Shown here: positions 911 through 54,004 of the stretch, piece by piece
Layout: each line of letters opens with the position of its first letter
Numbering within the stretch: the first letter of the stretch is position 1
Assembly: GCF_037042905.1 (NCBI RefSeq)
Contig: NC_087246.1
Coordinates: 11,718,001 to 11,782,000, forward strand
DNA length: 64,000 bases
Direction of reading: 5' to 3'
From: Lytechinus pictus
Taxonomy: Eukaryota
Program-made: the position numbers and the translations under genes
Notes under the pieces: generated by a model
The model's database searches: none
Seen by the model: only the letters and a program-made list of their open reading frames with translations
What the model was told of the DNA's origin: nothing

Positions 911-3900
911 CTCATGAAGCTGATTGGCTAGTTTCAAGTTCTGATCTTTCTGTTCCAAAAGCTCTCCAATGATGCCCTGCTTGTTGCTATTGGCAACCTT
1001 GAGGACCTCACTCTGATTGGCTAACTCCTTCCGCAGAGACTCCACCTCCATGCGGAGATCGTACGACATGTTCTCCTTCTCGGTGTGGGCAGTCTCCAGC
1101 TTCATACGGAGCTCATGCCTCTCCTGCTCCAGGGCCTGGAGAATTTGGAATAAAATTAATATCAACAATCGTATAATTATAAAAAAATATTTTAATCAAT
1201 AACTCTATCATAATAATTGAGTTATAACTTGATTGATTTCACTCTCCTTTTTCTAAATGTCTTTCTGCCCCTCCCTCCCCCTCTTTCTCTCCATCCCACC
1301 CCTCCCTCTACATTTCTTAAGTCTCACTGTCTCTATCTACATATAGATATGGCTCCTTGCCTTCCTTGTCTGTCTCATTTTACTTTCCTTATTCCTCCAT
1401 ATCTTTTCCCTCATCCTCCCTCTCCCTCCTCTCTCCTACATGTTCAATGCAATATTCTGCCTCAAAATCCCACAATCAATACCCAACCCATTGGCCATTA
1501 CAAGAAATATTCATAATTCAACAAGTATTAAAAGCATCTGTCCTGGAACGATCACGTCCTCGCATTCTCATTCACTTGCTCTCAACTTTCACCTTCATTG
1601 GCGGCATACTTGGTGCTGTGCAAGTCACGCAGGTAGAACTAAGTTGACCATTAGAAAGTATGCAGCAATTTCACGCAGCAGAGAATCAATGCTGAAGGAC
1701 ATTCGCTTGCACGCAACCTGTATATACATGTACATTGAACATCCAATGCATGGATAAAAGCCCAAATGTTATGTGCTTCAATCATAATGTGATCAAAATC
1801 ATCACAATGAGAATATTGCGTTAGGCAATTTTGATTGATTTATTTGAAACGAAGCAGTATGACCTTGCAGTCGATATGTACAGACATTAATTGTGGTGTT
1901 ACAAAACAAAAGGGGATCAATGGAAAGGTGATGTAATCTTCACTTTTGTACTCTCTACCAAGCCTACAGTTAAGAATATCTTACAAAATACATTCCCTAA
2001 AATGAAAATAATCTATTTGATTATACAGTGTGTATCAAAAAAAGTTTACACTTTGAAAAAGCCCTGGGAATTAAAAAAGATACATCATGTGGGTAATTTT
2101 TTCACATATAATCTTAGGTTTGGGTCTCATCTATCCAATGAAACTATAAGTTTTGACAGAATGTTACACTTGAGTGAGCACTGTCCATTTTTGTAAAGCT
2201 CGCAGAAATCTGTTTGCGCAGAAATGCTAGTTTTCACGCAGTGTCAAGGGGAAAGGGCAAAATCAAATTTACCCTGCGAAACATTTCTCATACATTTCCC
2301 TTGCAGTTTTAGTCAATTGAAATAAAACAGATACATTCAAGCATTTTGTAACAATTTTGCCACCCAAATTGATATTTCAACACTTAGTAAGCACAACCTT
2401 TACCCTTTTTGTGCCAGCTGGATCTGAGGACATAACTAAATCTGAACAAAAGTTTATATCAGACATCTCCAGCATTTTTTCACTAAGTTTTTATCATTTA
2501 AAGTGGGTTTACATTTCATTTTTTATTTAATACTTGTTTCTCCACACCTTTTCCAAGCTTGACAATGATTAACAAAATGAAAATCAAGCCTAAGCCATTT
2601 CATGTAAATCACAGCTCAGTGTAAATCAAATATCGTCACGATGGCCTTGGTGTGTGGGGGAGTGGGATGAAGCGCAATGCACTCTTTGAAGTGTTTTGGG
2701 CAAGGAAATAAGTTAAAAAGGTAAAAGAAATCTTCAAATCAATTTTACTAGCTAAATTCAACGTGTTCTTCATGATTAAGGTCTACTTTTATTCGCATAA
2801 CTATTTCAAAGTTCTGCGCAAATCATTTTTCACTAACTTTTCAAAAGTAAGTGGTGCTCACTCAAGCGGAAATATTTTTGACAGTTATATCGTCATTTGC
2901 TTAAATGGATCTGTACCAATGTTAAATTGTGGAAAAATCTTCAGGATATTACAAATGTATAATTTTACAGGATTTTTTATAAGTGTAAACTTTATTTTGA
3001 TACGCACTGTATAGCCTTTAGATTAATTTTTGTAAATGCATTTTGATATTCGAATGTACACAAAGTTTTACACGAAGTGGCCCAGTGCATGCAGAGTGAC
3101 TACTGTACATGTACATGTACACTGTAATAAAAAAAAACATTTGAAACATTTCTCCTTCATTCTTATGACTTTTTTATCTCTGCAAAGTGTATACATGTAC
3201 ATGTAGAAAGACTTTTTTTAAGACAGCTTGCAGGCAAAGTAAAAATGTCTTCCATTTAAAGAATAAAATCTTCTTTGTTGAATTTATTGATTCCTGGTCA
3301 AATACAAAGTAGAAACTGATTGAATATAAAAGAATGTAATGTAGATAAAACGTAGTATCTTATTAATTCAAATACTCATGCACTGGAAAAACTATGAACT
3401 TTTAAATACTCGATCAAATGAGCCTGGAATGAAACCTAGCTCCAAAACACATGTACATGTAGGCCTACGTATCAGTACTAATAGACCTGGAGGTTCCATT
3501 TGGAGGGGGGGGGGGCGTAAATGTTAGATTGATCAATAAATTGAACAAGTGGAATGCCTCTGGCGGTCTCACCTGCATCACACGCGATTCAATATAGCAG
3601 TAGTGCTGACTTTGAAAACTACTACAAATAATTATTCACAAAAAACACCATTCATATTTATAATGAAACAATACTACGTGCATCGACATTTGACCTTGAT
3701 CATGTGACCTAAAACTTGTCAGTGAAACTTGATTACCCCTATATCCACATCCACATTTTATACACTATATCTATAAAATTTGAAAGTAATGACAGCAATC
3801 TAATAATTACCTCTAAAATGGCCAAAGTTCAATGACCTTACATGACCTTTGACCTTGATCATGTGACGCGAAACTTGCACAGGATGTTCAGTGATACTTG

Positions 3901-5353
3901 ATTACTCTTATGTCCAAGTTTCATGAATCAGATCCATAAACTTTCAAAGTTATGATGGTAATTCAACAGATACCCCCATTATGGCCAAAGTTCATTGACC
4001 TTTGACCTTGGTCATGTGACCTGAAATGCGCACAGGATGTTCAGTGATACTTGATTACTCTTATGTCCAGGTTTTATGAACTAGACCAATACACTTTCAA
4101 AGTCATGATGTAATTCAACAAATACCCCCAACTTGGCCGAAGTTCATTGACCTTAAATGACCTTTGACCTTAATCATGTGACCTGAAACTTGCACAGGAT
4201 GTTGATTACTCTTATGTCCAAGTTTCATGAATCAGATCCATAAACTTTTAAAGTTATGATGGTAATTCAACAGATACCCCCAATCTGGCCAAAGTTCATT
4301 GACCCTAAGGCCTAAATGACCTTTGACCTTGGTCATGTGACGTGAAACTCAAGCAGGATGTTCAGTAATACTTGATTAACCTTATGTCCAAGTTTCATGA
4401 ACTAGGTCCATATATTTTCTAAGTTATGATGACATTTCAAAAACTTAACCTTAGGTTAAGATTTTGATGTTGATTCCCCCAACATGGTCTAAGTTCATTG
4501 ACCCTAAATGACCTTTGACCTTAGTCATATGACCTGAAACTCAGGCAGGATGTTCAGTAATACTTGATTAATCTTATGGCAAAGTTTCATCAACTAGGTC
4601 CATATACTTTCTAATTTATGCTGTCATTTCAAAAACTTAACCTTAGGTTAAGATTTGGTGTTGACGCCGCCGCCGTCGGAAAAGCGGCGCCTATAGTCTC
4701 ACTCTGCAATGCAGGTGAGACAAAAACTATTACACAAATTTTAATCACTTAACAGTGTGAAATACATGTACATGTGTAATGCACTTTTTAATTAATTGGA
4801 TATTTATGTTTATGTTTGTGGTAACTCCCGTAGGAACTCGGCAGGACAGCATTTTGCTGGTAAACACCAAGCTGGTATGTAACCAATTACCTAGAAACAT
4901 TTTATATATTTATATATATATGTGTAAAGTTATAAATGTACAACAGCTTTGGCAACTCTTTTATTTAAATATTGTAAAGAAATGGATGAAGAGAACAATG
5001 GTAGGCGTAGCTTAAATCAAGGTTCCCCAGAGCTATCTACCCTTTGGAAAAATTGGTGACGCCGAAAAAATGTCTCTGCCGGGAATCGAACCCGGGCCCC
5101 CAGCTTTGAACGCCGGTGCCTTAACCACTAGACCACAGAGACGGGTTAGTGGCTAGGGCAACCCCGATCCGATTGACCGTCAGATAGACAGATTTTCGAC
5201 ACTATACCAATTATAATTTCCTTTGTCGGGTGAAGGTGGGTTTCGAACAATGACAAGCCGCCATGCTTCAGCTGGATCAAAGCTATTGCTTTGATACAGT
5301 ACACGTATGGGAGAAAGTATACAAATATGTGTAAAGTTATAAATGTACAACAG

Positions 5354-5396
<43 letters not shown>

Positions 5397-8300
5397 ATTG
5401 GCGAAGAAGCTCAAAAAGCATTGAAGCTAGAGACGTGAAGATACCTGAAGAAGGCCCAACTAAATGGCTGAAAGCTTGTACTAATAAAAGTTGAAGAAAT
5501 CCAGGCTACGTCTCTAGCTTCAATGCTTTTTGAGCTTCTTCGCCAATATATTACTCACTGAAGCACCCACGCAATGTTTAGGTCCTTGCTCGTCACAATT
5601 ATATATATATATATATATATACATATATGTATATATGATATATATTTGATGCTCTATGGATGTAAACAAGGATGTGCGGGTGGATTGGAATGGTTGTGGT
5701 ACAAATGAACAGTCATTGGACATGATTCTACATACATATTTAAAGCCTACGATTTTAGATTTCCTTTTCTAATTCATAAGCATGAACGAATTAGTGTCTT
5801 ATAGGACTTGATGTAATATACATGTTCATGTACAGCATAAAGTAAGCTGAGAAAAGGGCAATGACCAAATTAAAACCGAGATCTTTTCACCTTTACAGTT
5901 TTTTTTTAGAAACATACCTGTATGTATAATGCTGAGTTGAACTAGAAATGACTCACAAAAAAATTTACTAGGACTTCACTAATTTCTGTCTAAAGTGCAG
6001 AACTTAAGAAAATATGGTATTTCCCCTGGTTGGTTTTGTAATGAATACACTGATTTATAATAGATAAGTGGTTGACATGAACCTATAACCCGGATGTAAT
6101 CAAAACCAATCACTTCCTGTGAATGCAGAAAGAGAAAAACGACATAACTTCACATGTACATGTACAGTACTTGACCAAGCCATTCGGGAAAGAAAATAAA
6201 GTTTGGGTGGGGTGCGTAGCAAAAATGTCATTACAAAAACATGAAATTTTTCAATTCTAAAATAAAAATTGCTTTTACCCCTTGCAAATATCTACATTTA
6301 TTCAAAAGTTCATATAAATTATCAAGTTAAAATAACAGTAACCAAACTCCAGAGTCAAAGGCTAAAAGACTGATATTTAAAAGGGAACATTATAATTTTC
6401 ACATCAATGTATTTTCATAAAATATAAAGTTAGAATAAATATGTATTATAAATATATTCCAACTTTATATAATTTTTAGGCAGACATACACTCATTATGT
6501 ACTGTGCAATGTACATGTATGGACATTTTGTTGTCACACTGGTCCTAAACAATTAATTTACTACTATTATAATCTATATGTTCTTCAAAATCTGAGACTC
6601 TGAGCGTAATAATTTCCTTACATTACAAACCAAATTCAAGTCTGAAAAAAATGTTTTTATTTGTCAAAATTACTGCCTATGATTGTATTTTTTTGTATTG
6701 ACACAAGCAGTATTTATTTAAGGCTTCACAGTTCAGGCCACTACACAATGGTTTTGATCAATTAAAATATCTCAACATCTGCTCAACACAAAACAGACAC
6801 ACGTACAATCAATACTAACCTTACATGTATTTTTTTATACATGTATATTTGCAACAATAGTCGTACAGCATATAAAGGAATTAGAAACAGTGTTATAATA
6901 CAGGGTTACTTTAATTTTCAGCTTTAACAGCATGAATGAAACTGACTCCTGAATATTTATACCAAAGTATATAGTATACCATATTTTCTATGTTCATTTT
7001 ATTTTCTATGATTATTCTCAGTTTGAATATAGCCTACATGTACATGTATGCACACATCACTCTGAGCTACAAAAATGAGGACCAGGTAAAGTAAGGCACT
7101 GTATGTGTGATTGGACCGACTGATCTTTTGATAAAAAATTTGGGTATTGATGCATTGCATCATGACGTATACTGCATTGTTCTGTGGCATTGGAATTTGA
7201 CAATTATTACATAAATAATTTTGCTATAGAAACAACAATAATAATGATCATATTCAGTGCAGTGATGCACCATCCAGCCAAAGTGAGCCAATAACAATGT
7301 CCATGGTAATTGAAATTCAGAATCAACACTAAAGATGTTACTTTTTTTTAAATGTTTGGGTAGTCTGCTTCTCCATTTTATATCAACTGTCATTTCAAAT
7401 GACCAGTATAATTAGTTCAGATCTATACCATTGTGCTTGCCATAGTTTAAAGCAACTTAATTAAAAGGAATGACTTCACTAGTTCTTATTCTCCTATTTT
7501 GTTATTTTTCTCTGTTTTCTTTCCCCTTCTTCTTCTTCCACTTCCTCCCCCTGTCCATTCTTCAACTTCATCAACATCATCTTTTCTTCATCTTCCCCTT
7601 CTCCTGAACACCTTCTCTATCATATTCTTCTACTTTGCTACATAATCTCCAATCTAGACTTGTAGACAATTTTTCTGACTGCCATGATCCTGGTATCGAT
7701 GATACACCTGAGCAAACAGTGATGGCTTCTTAACTGCACGTCTTCTTACCTATATCTAATATTACGCCAAACTTGGTGAACAAATCAAGCATCTTTACTC
7801 TCGGAAGCCTACATCTAATACAATACCTGGGACTGATGCAATCTTGAGTTTGTGGAACGTTTATTAACATACTGTACATGATATGCAAAATAATCTTGAT
7901 GTGTACAGCATCGTAAATTCTCAATATCAAGCCTACATCTATCACCTGCACCCGTTCTCTCTCTCTCTCTCTCATGTGTTTATCTTTTTTATTACCTGTC
8001 ATGAACAAAGATCTACATTCATCTGAATTCTCTATTTCTCTCTCTCTCTCTTGTTCCAAGAATATATTTTCTGCTTTGATCCCTTAATTATTTTATAAAG
8101 TGAACAAAGTTTTCAATTTGACAGCATGCTAATAAACTCTCACTTCCAATGGGTCTCAATTACCTGTTTCTAAGGGGCTGATAGAAACTCTATCATTAAA
8201 TTATAGTTCTACCACAAGAATAAAAGATAAGACTTGGGTTTCTAAAGATCTTTTTTTTTTCTCCTATAGAAATGCAGTCTCTTTATTAATGTACATGAAT

Positions 8301-32110: not shown

Positions 32111-33980
32111 ACGACAAACCCCACCATAGAAGACTTGAGACCAGTTTCGCTAACAGACCATTTCACAAAGATCCTGGAGAAATTTATTGCGAAGTGGTTG
32201 GTGGGTGACATTGGCAATGCGATCGATAAGTCACAGTTCGGCAACAGGAAAGGTCATTCAACTGCACATTATTTGATAGATATACTAAACACAATTCATC
32301 AGAATGCCGATAAACCAAAAATGGTCTCAACCCTGGTGGCTACGGACTTCAGCAAAGCCTTCGACAGGATAGATCATGGGCTAGCTGTTAGGAAACTGCT
32401 TGATATGGGGGCATCTCCGTCCTTGGTGGCTTGGATCTCCAATTTCCTCTCCAACCGAAAGCAGAATGTACGTTATCTGTCTCAACTCTCTGATTGGATG
32501 GAGATTTCGGCAGGTACTCCGCAAGGCACTCGACTTGGACCGATAATCTTCGTCTGAATGATCAACGACTTGTTCAAGGATAGCGACCACCAATATTGGA
32601 AATATGTCGACGACCTCTCCCTGCTTGAATGTAGGAAATCAACGGATCAATTAAAAATCCAAGAAGAAGTAAATGAACTGGAGAAATGGACCAAAGACAA
32701 CTGCATGAAACTGAACCCTAAGAAATGTGTCGTAATGAACGTTCAGTTTATGAGAAACCCAACATGTGTCCCAAAAGTAATAATTGATGATCAAGAACTA
32801 GGTGAAGTCCATCTTGTTAAACTTTTAGGTGTGTTCGTACAAGATGACTTAAAATGGTCATACCATGTTACAGAAATGGTCAAGGCAGCGAGCATGAGGC
32901 TACACATGATGCGGATCCTGAAAGGTTTTCGGCTACCAGTTGAGGATTTGAAAGTAGTATATTGTTCTTATGTGCGCCCGAAACTCGAATACTGCGCCCC
33001 GGTTTGGCATTCTGGCCTAACGCAGAAAGAAAAAAAAATGATTGAGAGAATTCAGAAACGTGCGTGTCGCCTCATGCTTGGCCAAAGGTACACCAGTTAT
33101 GATGATGCCCTCACTGTTCTTCACCTCCCAACATTAGAAGAGAGAAGGGAAACGTTAACACTGAAACTAGCAAGTAACCTTACAAAAGAGACGTCCCCAT
33201 TCCATCACTGGCTCCCTCCTACCAGAGCCATTAGCACCTCCCGTAACCTGCGGAATGCTGGGAAATACTCTGAAATTAAGTGCAAAACCCAGCGCTATAA
33301 AAAGAGCGCACTGCCATTCATTGTGAGGCTACTCAACTCAAAATCTGAATAACTGGCTAAATTATAATAATGATAACAAATAATACATTGTATGAATAAT
33401 TGATTTTTTAGTTGGCAGTATGAAAAAATGAAATGATTAGCATCAGAGTTACTTATTCTACTTATAATATAGATGCAGATCATAAATTATGCTCAAATTA
33501 TAAATCTTAATGCTCTTGGACACATTTTTTTTTTTTTAACACTTTTATACATTTCAAGCTGGATATCCCGCTAGTCTTTATCATGTTTGCCAAGGCAATA
33601 CTGTATATCAGTGTTTTAACGATACAAAAAATATTTCTATTGCCACCCATATTGTATAAATTATATGACCTTAAACTTTGTATCCTTAAGCCTATACTTG
33701 CACCGAAAGATGCATGGCATATATATCACAAAACAACCGTATTGAATTATATTATATTATGAAATCTTCATCTAGTAAAATCATTTGTTAAATCCTATTA
33801 CCAATATCCATTTATTCAGATCAGAGTTTAGTTACTTATGTCTTATTTCAATATCTTATTTTTAACAACTATTGTGTGTGTATTGTTTGTATTAATCATT
33901 TTTGTAAATTGCACGCAATTCAGCCGTGAGGCTGCTATATGCAAATGTTTTTATACCAAAATAAATATTTTAAAAAAAAT
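32111..33980 (+). mobile_element. 5'-truncated non-LTR retrotransposon (LINE, CR1/L2-group-like RT) with one premature stop
   Basis: RT motifs LRPVSLT, QFG, DFSKAFD, GTPQGTRLGP, YVDD and a C-terminal YVRPKLEYCAPVW...IERIQKRACR. In-frame TGA at 32555-32557, ORF stop at 33352. The AT-rich 3' UTR ends in AATAAA plus an A-run near 33960-33979. Confidence 0.9.
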
Positions 33981-52443: not shown

Positions 52444-54004
52444 CACTACTCAAAAAAAGTTAAGGACCACTTTTTAAAACGTACATAAAGATTTTATACA
52501 AGGTGTTTTATTTCTGGAAATACCTCAGTACAACTGTCCTAAATGTCCTTAAACACGCTGTGATCAATTTCACGCATGGGTGGTTTCAGTTGTTGCACAA
52601 TGTCTCTCGCATCACTGCACATCCTGAAAAGTGGGCCCCGAGGGGTATCAGCTACCGACATGAAGTGGTAAAAACGAATGTCTGAGTGTCTTTCAGGCAG
52701 TTCAGTAACGAGTGTGACCACCTCCTGCAGCAATAACGGCTTCACAGCGCTGTCTCATGGAGCTGATGAGGCGATTGATGTCTCTGACGTCCAGTGCATC
52801 CCATGCAGCCTCCAGAGCCACACCCAGCTGCTGCAGTCCAAGTGGATGGGCTTCGAGCTGCTCGAGACTCCTCCCCATCATGTCCCAGACGTGCTCTATC
52901 GGGTTTAAGTCCGGGGACCTCGCTGGCCACTCCATACGCTCAATCCCCTGGCCCTCAAGGAACTCGGTCACCACCCTAGCTCGGTGGGCACGGGCATTGT
53001 CATCCATGAAAATGATGTTTTGTCCCACATTTTCTGCAAATGGCACCACTATAGGTTCAAGGACCTCATCCCTGTACCTCACTCCTGTCATTGCTCCCCC
53101 TGGGACCACGTAGAGACGAGTACGGTTGGCGTAGGTGATGCCTCCCCACACCATGACGCTGCCTCCCCCATAACGGTCATGTTCTGCAATACAGGGGTCT
53201 GCAAATCTCTCTCCTGGTCGCCTCCAGACTCTCGAACGTCCATCATTGTGGTCAAGGGAAAATCTGCTCTCATCTGTGAACAGAACTCTACGCCATTGCT
53301 GTCTGGTCCATCTGACATGCTCCCGGGCCCAGTTGAGACGAATTCTTCTGTGAGCAGGGGTGAGTGGGACACACTGAGCTGGCCGTCTGGCATGCATATT
53401 GGCTCTGTGAAGTCGGTTACGGATTGTTTGAGTGGAAACAATCACTCCAGTTGCCGCAGCGAAGTCATTGTTGAGGCGGCGTGCACTGTGAAAGCGGTTG
53501 CGGAGGCTGAGATTCGTCAAGTAGCGATCATCTCTAGGGGTTGTCGAAACTGGTCGGCCACTGCGGGGTCTCTCGGAGTATAGCCCTGTCTCTCGGTGTC
53601 TTTGATTTGCTCTGCTAATGACACTGTGTGACACGCCCATCATTCTGGCTACTCTTCGCTGACTGAGGCCAGCTTCCAGCATCCCTAGGGCTCTGGCTAC
53701 ATCTGTTTCACTTAGGTGGTGTCTTGGCATTGCTGTTGTAGGCAAGTTGTTGATTGTAGAGACTAAAGACAGAAAATGCATTTGAATCCACATTTGTACC
53801 ACTTCACAATGGGCCCACTTTTCAGGATATGCAATAATGCGAGAGACATCATGCAACAACTGAAACCACCCATGTGTGAAATTGTTACAGGGTGTTTGAG
53901 GAGATTCAAGACAGCCATATTCGGGTATTTCTAGAAATACAACACCCGGTTTGAAAATTGTATACACACATTAAAAAGTGGTCCTTAACTTTTTTTGAGT
54001 AGTG
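52444..54004 (-). mobile_element. Full-length Tc1-family DNA transposon (1561 bp)
   Basis: TA duplication. Perfect outer TIR CACTACTCAAAAAAAGTTAAGGACCACTTTTT, with imperfect inverted similarity to ~195 bp. Intact transposase inside. Confidence 0.96.
52702..53730 (-). CDS. Tc1 DD34E transposase, 342 aa, intact
   Basis: Starts MPRHHLSE with a paired-like HTH, then RSGRP, VLFTDESRF, VMVWGGI, FMDDNARAH-...-SPDLNPIEHVW. There are 34 residues between the second D and the E. Confidence 0.95.
   Translation of the reverse strand: MPRHHLSETDVARALGMLEAGLSQRRVARMMGVSHSVISRANQRHRETGLYSERPRSGRPVSTTPRDDRYLTNLSLRNRFHSARRLNNDFAAATGVIVSTQTIRNRLHRANMHARRPAQCVPLTPAHRRIRLNWAREHVRWTRQQWRRVLFTDESRFSLDHNDGRSRVWRRPGERFADPCIAEHDRYGGGSVMVWGGITYANRTRLYVVPGGAMTGVRYRDEVLEPIVVPFAENVGQNIIFMDDNARAHRARVVTEFLEGQGIERMEWPARSPDLNPIEHVWDMMGRSLEQLEAHPLGLQQLGVALEAAWDALDVRDINRLISSMRQRCEAVIAAGGGHTRY

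What the first reader, a model, noticed from the sequence alone, without database searches (positions are those of the whole stretch)
5065..5142. Fully paired tRNA with a UCA (UGA-stop-reading) anticodon and its own Pol III terminator
Seen: all four stems pair (only G-U wobbles), U33 and purine 37 are present, the A and B boxes are intact, and TTTTTT directly follows the discriminator base. Known: tRNA-Sec has a long variable arm and an extended acceptor stem, which this lacks. SINE heads usually lose acceptor pairing and continue into a body before terminating. Inference: a discrete opal-suppressor-like or stop-codon-decoy RNA, possibly amplified by a repeat. G32 is non-canonical and may block decoding.
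Basis: partly seen in the sequence, partly recalled or inferred. Interest (0 to 1): 0.8.

Follow-up and report, generated by a model that had tools for sequence, protein, structure and literature searches.

The report
Repeat-borne tRNA gene with stop anticodon
The perfectly shaped tRNA gene with a UGA-reading anticodon is real, but it is the conserved core of a roughly 407-base repeat present in thousands of copies, so it is more likely a part that the repeat uses for itself than a working stop-codon suppressor.

Summary
A 72-nt cloverleaf lies on the minus strand at 5142..5071. It scores 60.9 bits on Rfam tRNA and has anticodon UCA, intact A and B boxes, and T6 directly after the discriminator.

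It is not a solitary gene. It sits in a 407-bp unit (4920-5326) followed by a 30-39-nt second copy of the unit's other end, lodged in (TA)n. Read laying found 11,228 DNA contigs of one run matching this stretch. Summed word depth is about one million, against 18-67 for single diverged copies. Head-to-tail junctions occur, and the same element is in two further organisms with an identical tRNA part.

The scan found the same thing before: about 20 first-reader notes on other windows of this genome describe this UCA-tRNA repeat, including arrays with a period near 406 bp.

The layout matches the published insertion signature of Penelope-like retroelements: a (TA)n target, a partial tandem or 30-40-bp tail, no hammerhead and very high copy number. 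My best reading is a non-autonomous, probably Penelope-mobilised tandem element. Its tRNA module would serve the element, as a Pol III unit or an RNase P/Z cutting signal. Decoding of UGA is untested and unlikely. This is a new variant of a known kind.

The parts
5071..5142 (-). 72-nt tRNA-like gene. All four stems are paired, the anticodon UCA is at 5109..5107, position 32 is G, and the A box (UGGUCUAGUGG) and B box (GGUUCGAUUCC) are intact.
   Evidence: ARAGORN; Rfam tRNA 60.9 bits; pair list. It equals the family consensus: every listed position where nearly all reads differ from this copy lies outside the tRNA.
5065..5070 (-). T6 Pol III terminator directly after the discriminator base. 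A back-up T5 lies at 5052..5048.
   Evidence: Sequence.
4920..5326 (-). One full 407-bp repeat unit, given in tRNA sense, 5326 to 4920: 184 nt upstream part, tRNA, terminator, about 145 nt downstream part. The tRNA and the downstream part are the conserved block. The upstream part is variable among copies.
   Evidence: Direct repeat spacing of 407. Very high summed depth from 4928 to 5326 in three organisms. Listed variant density: 0.014 per nt in the tRNA, 0.026 in the downstream part, 0.27 in the 30 nt just upstream of the tRNA, and 0.10 in the rest of the upstream part.
5327..5356 (-). A 30-nt extra copy of the unit's other end. The match is 39 nt with 2 mismatches if 5318-5356 is compared with 4911-4949. 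It is either a heavily truncated neighbouring unit or a 'tail'.
   Evidence: the repeat finder family D5; 37/39 identity. The segment belongs to the repeat family and is not target DNA: depth over 4928-4948 is 268,030 in organism A and 85,976 in organism E.
5357..5389 (.). (TA)n microsatellite abutting one end of the insertion. TA-rich sequence at 4903-4919 abuts the other end.
   Evidence: Sequence. Loose ends of other copies also run into TA repeats in organisms A and E (table 7).
5144..5174 (+). Degenerate inverted partial copy of the tRNA's D-arm region, lying head-to-head against the tRNA 5' end. It is the most variable stretch among copies and can pair with the tRNA in long transcripts.
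   Evidence: Local alignment 15/18 to tRNA positions 8-26, with 5 of 300 shuffles scoring as well. Helices 5155-5147/5130-5122 and 5174-5166/5092-5084 appear in the fold of the whole unit. Variant sites are listed.

Best explanation
The UCA tRNA is the conserved core module of a high-copy, about 407-bp non-autonomous mobile repeat. The repeat inserts into (TA)n microsatellites and forms head-to-tail arrays and partial tandems. It is most likely copied by the reverse transcriptase and endonuclease of Penelope-like elements (PLEs). That would make it a relative of animal non-LTR 'retrozymes', with a tRNA where those carry a hammerhead ribozyme. In this reading the tRNA shape is kept because the repeat needs it. 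It could act as a self-contained Pol III transcription unit, or as a signal that lets host RNase P and RNase Z cut long tandem transcripts into unit lengths. The UCA anticodon would be an accident of the founder copy, kept because master copies are copied faithfully, and not because UGA is decoded. Shown: the gene's anatomy, the repeat unit, its abundance, tandem junctions, the (TA)n context, presence in three organisms, and lower variation in the tRNA. Inferred: PLE dependence, the role of the tRNA module, and lack of decoding.
For: The anatomy is that of a complete Pol III gene. The 407-bp unit carries a 30-39-nt terminal redundancy between TA repeats.

Abundance: 11,228 contigs of DNA run X1 were laid on the stretch. 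Summed word depth is 0.86-1.3 million over 4991-5137, against 18-67 for single diverged contigs. Organisms C and E hold the element too.

A contig joins 5307 back to 4945, which is only possible for head-to-tail units (tables 5 and 5c). Unchecked scan notes report arrays such as five tRNAs in 1,696 nt, a period of about 406.

Conservation: 1 listed variant site in 72 nt of tRNA against 27 in the other 305 nt of the unit (Fisher p = 0.025). That one change (A68 to G) keeps the pair as U.G. Organism C's 173-nt contig across the tRNA differs from this copy at only two places, both outside the tRNA and both being this copy's own private changes. Organism E's fixed differences all lie upstream of the tRNA.

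PMC8557442 describes, for PLEs of the Naiad clade: a preference for (TA)n targets, full copies preceded by truncated copies, a 30-40-bp tail at one end, no canonical hammerhead, and up to tens of thousands of copies. Each of these is seen here. Scan notes report many young PLEs in this genome.

The whole unit folds into a long rod on the tRNA-sense strand (-130.3 kcal/mol, z -4.4, 0 of 100 shuffles as stable), as retrozyme RNAs do.

A tRNA-like module 82.6% identical over 69 nt sits in another organism's partial-tandem repeat. It shares the acceptor, D and T arms but has a different anticodon arm (anticodon GAU, C33).
Against: No PLE partner was tied to this unit by sequence. I had only one copy and no access to the rest of the genome.

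The strand of the presumed RNA intermediate is unresolved. If it is the tRNA-sense strand, the RNA must pass T6 and so cannot be a Pol III product.

No read ends pile up at the tRNA borders in the one RNA-seq run laid (table 6). Processing by RNase P/Z therefore has no direct support.

The lower variation is shared by the 115 nt downstream of the tRNA, so it is not specific to the cloverleaf. Only the best-supported 40 of 90 variant sites were shown.

The depth sums are, by the tool's own warning, not copy numbers.

The rod-like fold is nearly as good on the other strand (z -4.0). Complementarity of the distal flanks alone is modest (z -2.7).
Confidence: 0.55

Rival explanations
1. A DNA-level repeat. 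The 407-bp unit is a satellite-like monomer or the cargo of a DNA transposon (Helitron/Helentron-type, TIR-type or recombinase-mobilised) that once captured an ordinary tRNA gene with its flanks. The tRNA is passive cargo.
For: Non-autonomous Helentrons of marine invertebrates carry a microsatellite followed by short arrays such as 1.5-2 monomers. A Helentron-like array with a terminal palindrome lies 250 bp away at 3680-4721. One scan note calls another copy a TIR transposon. Both strands of the unit fold almost equally well.
Against: This copy has no terminal inverted repeats, no TC...CTRR ends and no 3' palindrome. Helentron microsatellites in the cited work are 3-8-nt motifs, with insertion at TT and not at (TA)n. 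Passive cargo does not explain why the tRNA varies less than the upstream part, or why it is identical in three organisms.
Confidence: 0.22
2. A working UGA-reading tRNA. Many copies are transcribed by Pol III, matured and charged. The tRNA then reads UGA, either to the host's cost or to the benefit of mobile elements whose reading frames contain in-frame UGA.
For: All features needed for Pol III transcription and for tRNA folding are intact, including U8, A14, G18-G19, the G15-C48 pair, G53-C61 and the T loop. The anticodon does not vary among the listed variants or between organisms. Variation is concentrated in the 30 nt just upstream and the 12 nt just downstream of the gene. From my own knowledge, that pattern resembles the flank mutation pattern reported for actively transcribed tRNA genes. 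PLEs of the Naiad clade in clams and spiders have 3-4 in-frame UGA codons.
Against: Thousands of active suppressor genes should be very harmful. G32 is almost never seen in decoding tRNAs (my own knowledge). Those Naiad UGAs come with SECIS elements and are read as selenocysteine, which needs tRNA-Sec, and this is not tRNA-Sec. No SECIS or other RNA family was found in 4700-5700. RNA-seq shows no enrichment and no ends at the gene. The related module in L001 has a different anticodon arm.
Confidence: 0.07
3. An ordinary tRNA-derived SINE. The tRNA is the head with the internal promoter, and the rest is the body and tail copied by a LINE.
For: It is a tRNA-related, short, very abundant repeat with a simple-repeat end.
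Against: T6 follows the discriminator directly and a T5 follows 12 nt later, so a Pol III transcript would end before any body. 184 nt of the unit lie upstream of the tRNA and are part of the repeat. The acceptor stem is fully paired, unlike SINE heads.
Confidence: 0.05
4. A selenocysteine tRNA gene or its pseudogene.
For: The UCA anticodon, the anticodon loop with A37 and A38, and ARAGORN's label 'SeC'.
Against: The label rests on the anticodon alone. The acceptor/T stems are 7/5 and not 9/4, the D stem has 4 pairs and not 6, the variable region is 4 nt, and the discriminator is A and not G. The copy number is in the thousands.
Confidence: 0.01

Closest known systems
Animal non-LTR retrozymes and other non-autonomous derivatives of Penelope-like elements (10.64898/2026.07.22.740005; PMC8557442)
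   Same: Short non-coding units of 170-400 nt in tandem or partial tandem, high copy number, microsatellite targets, 30-40-bp one-sided tails, and a strongly self-paired unit RNA.
   Different: Retrozymes are defined by a hammerhead ribozyme in each unit. This unit has none and carries a complete tRNA gene instead. No sequence link to a PLE and no circular RNA was shown.
Helenus: non-autonomous LTR retrotransposons with tRNA-like sequences in their LTRs (PMC10886601)
   Same: A mobile element multiplies tRNAscan-type predictions, including stop-anticodon ones. In rust fungi all 109 and 245 predicted tRNA-Sup-CTA genes come from Helenus.
   Different: There are no LTR pair, no TG..CA ends, no PBS or PPT and no 5-bp duplication here. 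No match to the published Helenus consensus file was found.
tRNA-derived SINEs
   Same: A tRNA-related Pol III module inside a short, abundant repeat.
   Different: Here the tRNA is complete, internal to the unit and immediately terminated. SINE heads are at the 5' end, run on into the body and usually lose the acceptor pairing.
Tandemly repeated genuine tRNA gene clusters (my own knowledge, for example Xenopus and zebrafish; a tRNA-Lys array is noted in this genome)
   Same: Head-to-tail units, each with a full tRNA gene and terminator.
   Different: Those encode sense-codon tRNAs in local clusters. This one has a stop anticodon and G32, and is also dispersed as single units in (TA)n.
Eukaryotic tRNA-Sec
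   Same: UCA anticodon with A37 and A38.
   Different: The architecture differs in every defining respect.

Membership tests
tRNA (Rfam RF00005), canonical elongator tRNA gene | Cloverleaf with conserved tertiary nucleotides, scoring above the family's gathering score | tested here: met
   60.9 bits against 29. All stems are paired. U8, A14, G18-G19, A21, the G15-C48 pair, G53-C61 and U54-U55-C56 are present.
tRNA (Rfam RF00005), canonical elongator tRNA gene | Pyrimidine at position 32 and a body that fits the isotype of the anticodon | tested here: not met
   Position 32 is G. Isotype models (tRNAscan-SE 2) were not available. No sense isotype corresponds to UCA in the standard code.
tRNA (Rfam RF00005), canonical elongator tRNA gene | Mature CCA-tailed, aminoacylated RNA | not testable with these tools
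   Only a standard paired RNA-seq run could be laid. It shows read-through coverage and no ends at the gene.
tRNA-Sec | 9/4 (or 8/5) acceptor/T stems, 6-bp D stem, long variable arm, G73 | tested here: not met
   7/5 stems, 4-bp D stem, 4-nt variable loop, A73.
tRNA-derived SINE | tRNA head at the 5' end of the element, running on without a terminator into a body and a LINE-like tail | tested here: not met
   T6 lies directly after the discriminator, with a T5 12 nt later. 184 nt of the repeat lie upstream of the tRNA.
PLE-mobilised non-autonomous element / non-LTR retrozyme | Tandem or partial-tandem copies and a 30-40-bp one-sided tail | tested here: met
   30-39-nt second copy of the unit's other end. 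A head-to-tail junction contig joins 5307 to 4945. Arrays are reported in other windows (unchecked notes).
PLE-mobilised non-autonomous element / non-LTR retrozyme | Insertion into microsatellites ((TA)n for the Naiad clade) | tested here: met
   TA repeats lie on both sides here and at the ends of other copies in two organisms (table 7).
PLE-mobilised non-autonomous element / non-LTR retrozyme | Hammerhead ribozyme in each unit (defines retrozymes; absent from Naiads) | tested here: not met
   No hammerhead at Rfam gathering score in the window, none at E up to 5 in 4700-5700, and no CUGANGA...GAAA core inside the unit.
PLE-mobilised non-autonomous element / non-LTR retrozyme | Sequence shared with the 3' end or pLTR of an autonomous PLE of the same genome | not tested
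   No PLE is present in this window and the rest of the genome is not readable with these tools.
Helenus (LTR element with tRNA-like LTRs) | Two LTRs with TG..CA ends, PBS and PPT, 5-bp target duplication | tested here: not met
   No such structure. No match to the published consensus sequences.
Helentron/HINE tandem-repeat carrier | Subterminal inverted repeats, 3' palindrome, insertion at TT without duplication | tested here: inconclusive
   None of these adjoins the tRNA unit. A separate HINE-like element lies next door, and the true outer borders of a possible composite could not be set from one copy.

The most novel reading that the evidence does not exclude
Thousands of repeat-borne genes make a matured, charged tRNA that reads UGA. 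Retroelements of this genome would exploit it, for instance Penelope-like elements with in-frame UGA codons. That would make it a mobile element family carrying its own decoding factor, as some phages do. A milder version is that the tRNA replaces the hammerhead ribozyme as the unit-cutting device of a retrozyme-like element, by recruiting host RNase P and RNase Z.
Probability: 0.05. Interest if true: 0.9.

Novelty: new variant of a known kind. Interest (0 to 1): 0.48.

Why it matters
Repeat-borne tRNA look-alikes inflate tRNA gene counts and produce 'suppressor tRNA' calls in genome annotation. This family would add thousands of high-scoring false suppressors to one animal genome.

If the Penelope link holds, it shows that these elements can mobilise short parasites built around a tRNA rather than a hammerhead. 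That gives a testable idea for how tandem transcripts are cut to unit length by host enzymes.

If many copies are transcribed, the family is also a natural test of how a cell tolerates, or silences, a large load of tRNA genes with a stop anticodon.

Tried and rejected
**Reading the 32-nt direct repeat as a target-site duplication.** Rejected, because that segment is itself highly repeated in organisms A and E.

**Bivalve origin and known oyster repeats.** I first took the genome for an oyster. The tRNA and the flank motifs are absent from the 52 C. gigas satellite consensus sequences and from the Helenus consensus file. A scan follow-up note calls the genome a sea urchin. I did not verify this.

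**Fetching more copies.**
- Exact-pattern scans with a free anticodon found nothing in metagenome, viral or prokaryote-genome collections.
- Look-ups of two short ORFs of the element found nothing.
- A protein search with the translated tRNA region found no candidates.
- A transposase search meant to name the organism gave no names.

**Features looked for and not found.**
- Hammerhead, SECIS or other RNA families in or beside the unit: none.
- A primer-binding site for this tRNA's 3' end elsewhere in the window: none.
- Large-scale inverted repeat between the two flanks of the tRNA: the alignment score is not above shuffles. Only a modest folding signal appears.

**Parent isotype.** From memory the D arm, the 4-nt variable loop and the T arm resemble tRNA-Glu, while the related L001 module resembles tRNA-Thr. 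I could not test this and make no claim.

**Literature.** Ten searches found no description of this family. Repbase and Dfam could not be queried.

Full report
**What is at the site.** The window holds exactly one tRNA call, on the minus strand at 5142..5071, with anticodon UCA. Rfam's tRNA model scores it 60.9 bits (gathering score 29) over the full model, and no pair is flagged as non-standard.

My own pair list gives:
- 7/7 Watson-Crick pairs in the acceptor stem
- 4/4 in the D stem, one of them G.U
- 5/5 in the anticodon stem, one of them G.U
- 5/5 in the T stem

The nucleotides that hold a tRNA together are all present: U8, A14, G18-G19, A21, the G15-C48 pair, G53-C61 and the UUCGAUU T loop. 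The A box (UGGUCUAGUGG) and B box (GGUUCGAUUCC) are intact. T6 (5070..5065) follows the discriminator A directly, and a second T5 lies 12 nt further on.

The only atypical base is G32. The gene is not tRNA-Sec. ARAGORN's 'SeC' label rests on the anticodon alone, and the 7/5 stems, the 4-bp D stem, the 4-nt variable loop and A73 all differ from tRNA-Sec.

**It is part of a repeat.** A 39-nt stretch (4911-4949) recurs 407 nt later (5318-5356) with 37/39 identity. The exact part is about 30-32 nt. TA repeats lie outside both copies, at 4903-4919 and 5357-5389.

I first read this as a long target duplication. That is wrong, because the repeated segment is itself part of a very abundant family. When contigs of public runs were laid on 4760-5360:
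- 11,228 contigs of DNA run X1 (organism A) matched.
- Summed word depth reached 0.86-1.3 million over 4991-5137, while single diverged contigs have depths of 18-67.
- The left 32-nt segment alone carries 268,030 in A and 85,976 in organism E.

The tool warns that such sums are not copy numbers. I take them to mean thousands, perhaps about ten thousand, copies.

A contig that runs to 5307 and then continues at 4945 shows true head-to-tail units (tables 5 and 5c).

The scan's own notes, which are unchecked, list about twenty other places in this genome with the same thing. They include 'five intact cloverleaves in 1,696 letters' (period about 406), arrays of 1,695 and 2,084 letters, and cassettes inserted in (TA)n. 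This window has one copy only.

**Conservation.** This copy's tRNA equals the family consensus. The positions where nearly all reads differ from this copy (5060, 5160, 5244, 5267, 5342) all lie outside the gene.

Among the listed variant sites (at least 5% of reads; the 40 best supported of 90), one lies in the 72-nt tRNA. It is 5075, which is A68 to G and keeps the pair with U4 as U.G. The other 305 nt of the unit hold 27 sites (Fisher p = 0.025).

Listed variant density across the unit:

| Segment | Sites per nt |
|---|---|
| 30 nt just upstream of the tRNA | 0.27 |
| Rest of the upstream part | 0.10 |
| Downstream part | 0.026 |

The conserved block is therefore the tRNA plus about 115 nt downstream, and not the tRNA alone.

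Organism C holds a 173-nt contig across the tRNA. It differs from this copy only at 5060 and 5160, which are this copy's private changes. Organism E's fixed differences (5156, 5186, 5191, 5195) are all upstream of the tRNA. The anticodon is therefore stable among copies and among organisms. That is expected both under selection and under faithful copying of a few master copies.

**Expression.** One raw RNA-seq run (X41) covers the unit at about 180-420 reads per orientation, equally on both strands. Coverage is not enriched on the tRNA, no read ends pile up at its borders, and half of what was laid runs on into unlike flanks. This is read-through transcription of many copies within longer RNAs. 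It says nothing about a mature 72-nt RNA, which such libraries do not capture.

Several variants are frequent in RNA but rare in DNA. For example, 5075 T>C is about 50% in RNA against 0.5% in DNA, and a 6-nt deletion at 5214 is a third of RNA reads against none in DNA. A minority subfamily, or a few loci, therefore dominates the transcripts.

**What carries it.** I tested several carriers.
- *Helenus* (LTR elements with tRNA-like LTRs): no LTR structure and no match to the published sequences.
- *Oyster satellites*: no match.
- *Classical SINE*: contradicted by the immediate terminators and by the 184 nt of repeat upstream of the tRNA.
- *Helentron-type carriers*: they do hold a microsatellite followed by arrays of 1.5-2 monomers. 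However, their ends, their palindrome and their TT target are not seen at this unit.

The best match is the insertion signature of Penelope-like elements as described in PMC8557442:
- full copies preceded by truncated copies
- a 30-40-bp extension at one end
- a strong bias for microsatellites, specifically (TA)n for the Naiad clade
- no canonical hammerhead in that clade
- up to tens of thousands of copies in marine invertebrates

All of these are seen here. A scan note on another window (s1-323396) had proposed a Penelope-parasitic composite around a UCA tRNA, and that note gave me the lead. Other notes report many young PLEs in this genome, which one follow-up calls the painted sea urchin. 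I did not verify the organism.

A 2026 preprint argues that animal non-LTR retrozymes, which are tandem 170-400-nt units with a hammerhead, are non-autonomous PLE derivatives. The present unit looks like that kind of element with a tRNA in place of the ribozyme.

The unit has no hammerhead. Its RNA folds into a long rod (z -4.4 on the tRNA-sense strand and -4.0 on the other). Part of that rod comes from a degenerate inverted copy of the tRNA's D-arm region lying head-to-head against the gene (5144-5174).

**What the tRNA does.** A scan for tRNAs with the same D and T arms found one metagenome contig, L001. Its tRNA-like module is 82.6% identical over 69 nt. It also sits in a partial tandem (277-nt spacing), between inverted arms of about 200 nt.

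That module shares the acceptor stem, D arm and T arm with this one. Its anticodon arm is different (anticodon GAU, C33, and a mismatch at the top of the stem). This is one sequence from an unknown organism. Still, it points to constraint on the parts that Pol III factors and RNase P/Z recognise, and not on the anticodon.

Together with G32 and the copy number, I think decoding of UGA is unlikely (about 7%). The module more likely serves the repeat, either as a Pol III unit or as a cutting signal for host tRNA-processing enzymes in tandem transcripts. This is inference, and no end-mapping supports it yet.

The concentration of variation right next to the gene resembles the flank mutation pattern of actively transcribed tRNA genes (my own knowledge). 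It is a weak hint that many copies are transcribed.

**Limits.**
- Only one copy could be read.
- The variant table was truncated.
- Depth sums are not copy numbers.
- The sense strand of a presumed RNA intermediate is unresolved.
- No autonomous partner was linked by sequence.
- Repbase and Dfam could not be searched, so the family may already have a name there. Ten literature searches found no description.

**Verdict.** The finding is a new variant of a known kind, namely repeat-borne tRNA-like genes, with a probable link to Penelope-like elements that is worth testing.

Noticed in passing
window 3680-4721: About six tandem units of 151-192 bp (3678-4666) are followed by a G+C-rich stretch and a 12-bp-stem palindrome (GTCTCAC..CTGCA A TGCAG..GTGAGAC, 4696-4721). 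The layout is that of non-autonomous Helentron (HINE) elements.
   Followed up: partly
window 4803-4900: A second, unrelated dispersed repeat is directly beside the tRNA unit. Summed depth reaches 5.6e5 in DNA run X1 and about 900 per orientation in RNA-seq. Its left border is sharp at 4803-4831, with heterogeneous flanks beyond. It is nearly absent from organisms C and E.
   Followed up: no
window 5394-5550: A 157-bp palindromic element has 43-bp perfectly complementary arms and a 71-nt centre, and is flanked by TA repeats on both sides. The centre holds a hammerhead-like core (CUGAAGA, a 4-bp stem, GAAA, 5445-5473), but the cleavage-site base would be G and Rfam does not call it. Scan notes describe similar palindrome-plus-hammerhead Penelope relics elsewhere in this genome.
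   Followed up: partly
window 5075, 5146-5165, 5214: Several variants of the repeat are common in RNA-seq reads (30-50%) but rare in the DNA contigs (0-10%). One is T>C at 5075 inside the tRNA. Either a minority subfamily supplies most transcripts, or RNA editing could contribute. The DNA and RNA come from different individuals.
   Followed up: no
window 52702-53967 (-): A Tc1/mariner-type transposase frame of 421 aa (HTH_Tnp_Tc3_2 plus DDE_3). Products 99% identical occur on contigs of other public runs, so the element is young.
   Followed up: partly
window 32135-33352 (+): Two adjacent frames carry the two halves of a reverse transcriptase domain (RVT_1, E 4e-18 and 3e-5). This is a broken retroelement whose clade was not determined.
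   Followed up: no
L001 586-1552: A metagenome contig has a related tRNA-like module (anticodon GAU, C33, an extra base before the D stem) and a degenerate second copy 277 nt upstream. Both lie between inverted arms of about 200 nt (586-784 and 1344-1552). This looks like another tRNA-bearing repeat in an unknown organism.
   Followed up: partly
window 5245-5262 (-): The upstream part of the unit contains a B-box-like motif (GUUCGAAACCC). It may be the remnant of a second tRNA-like module. Rfam does not call it.
   Followed up: no
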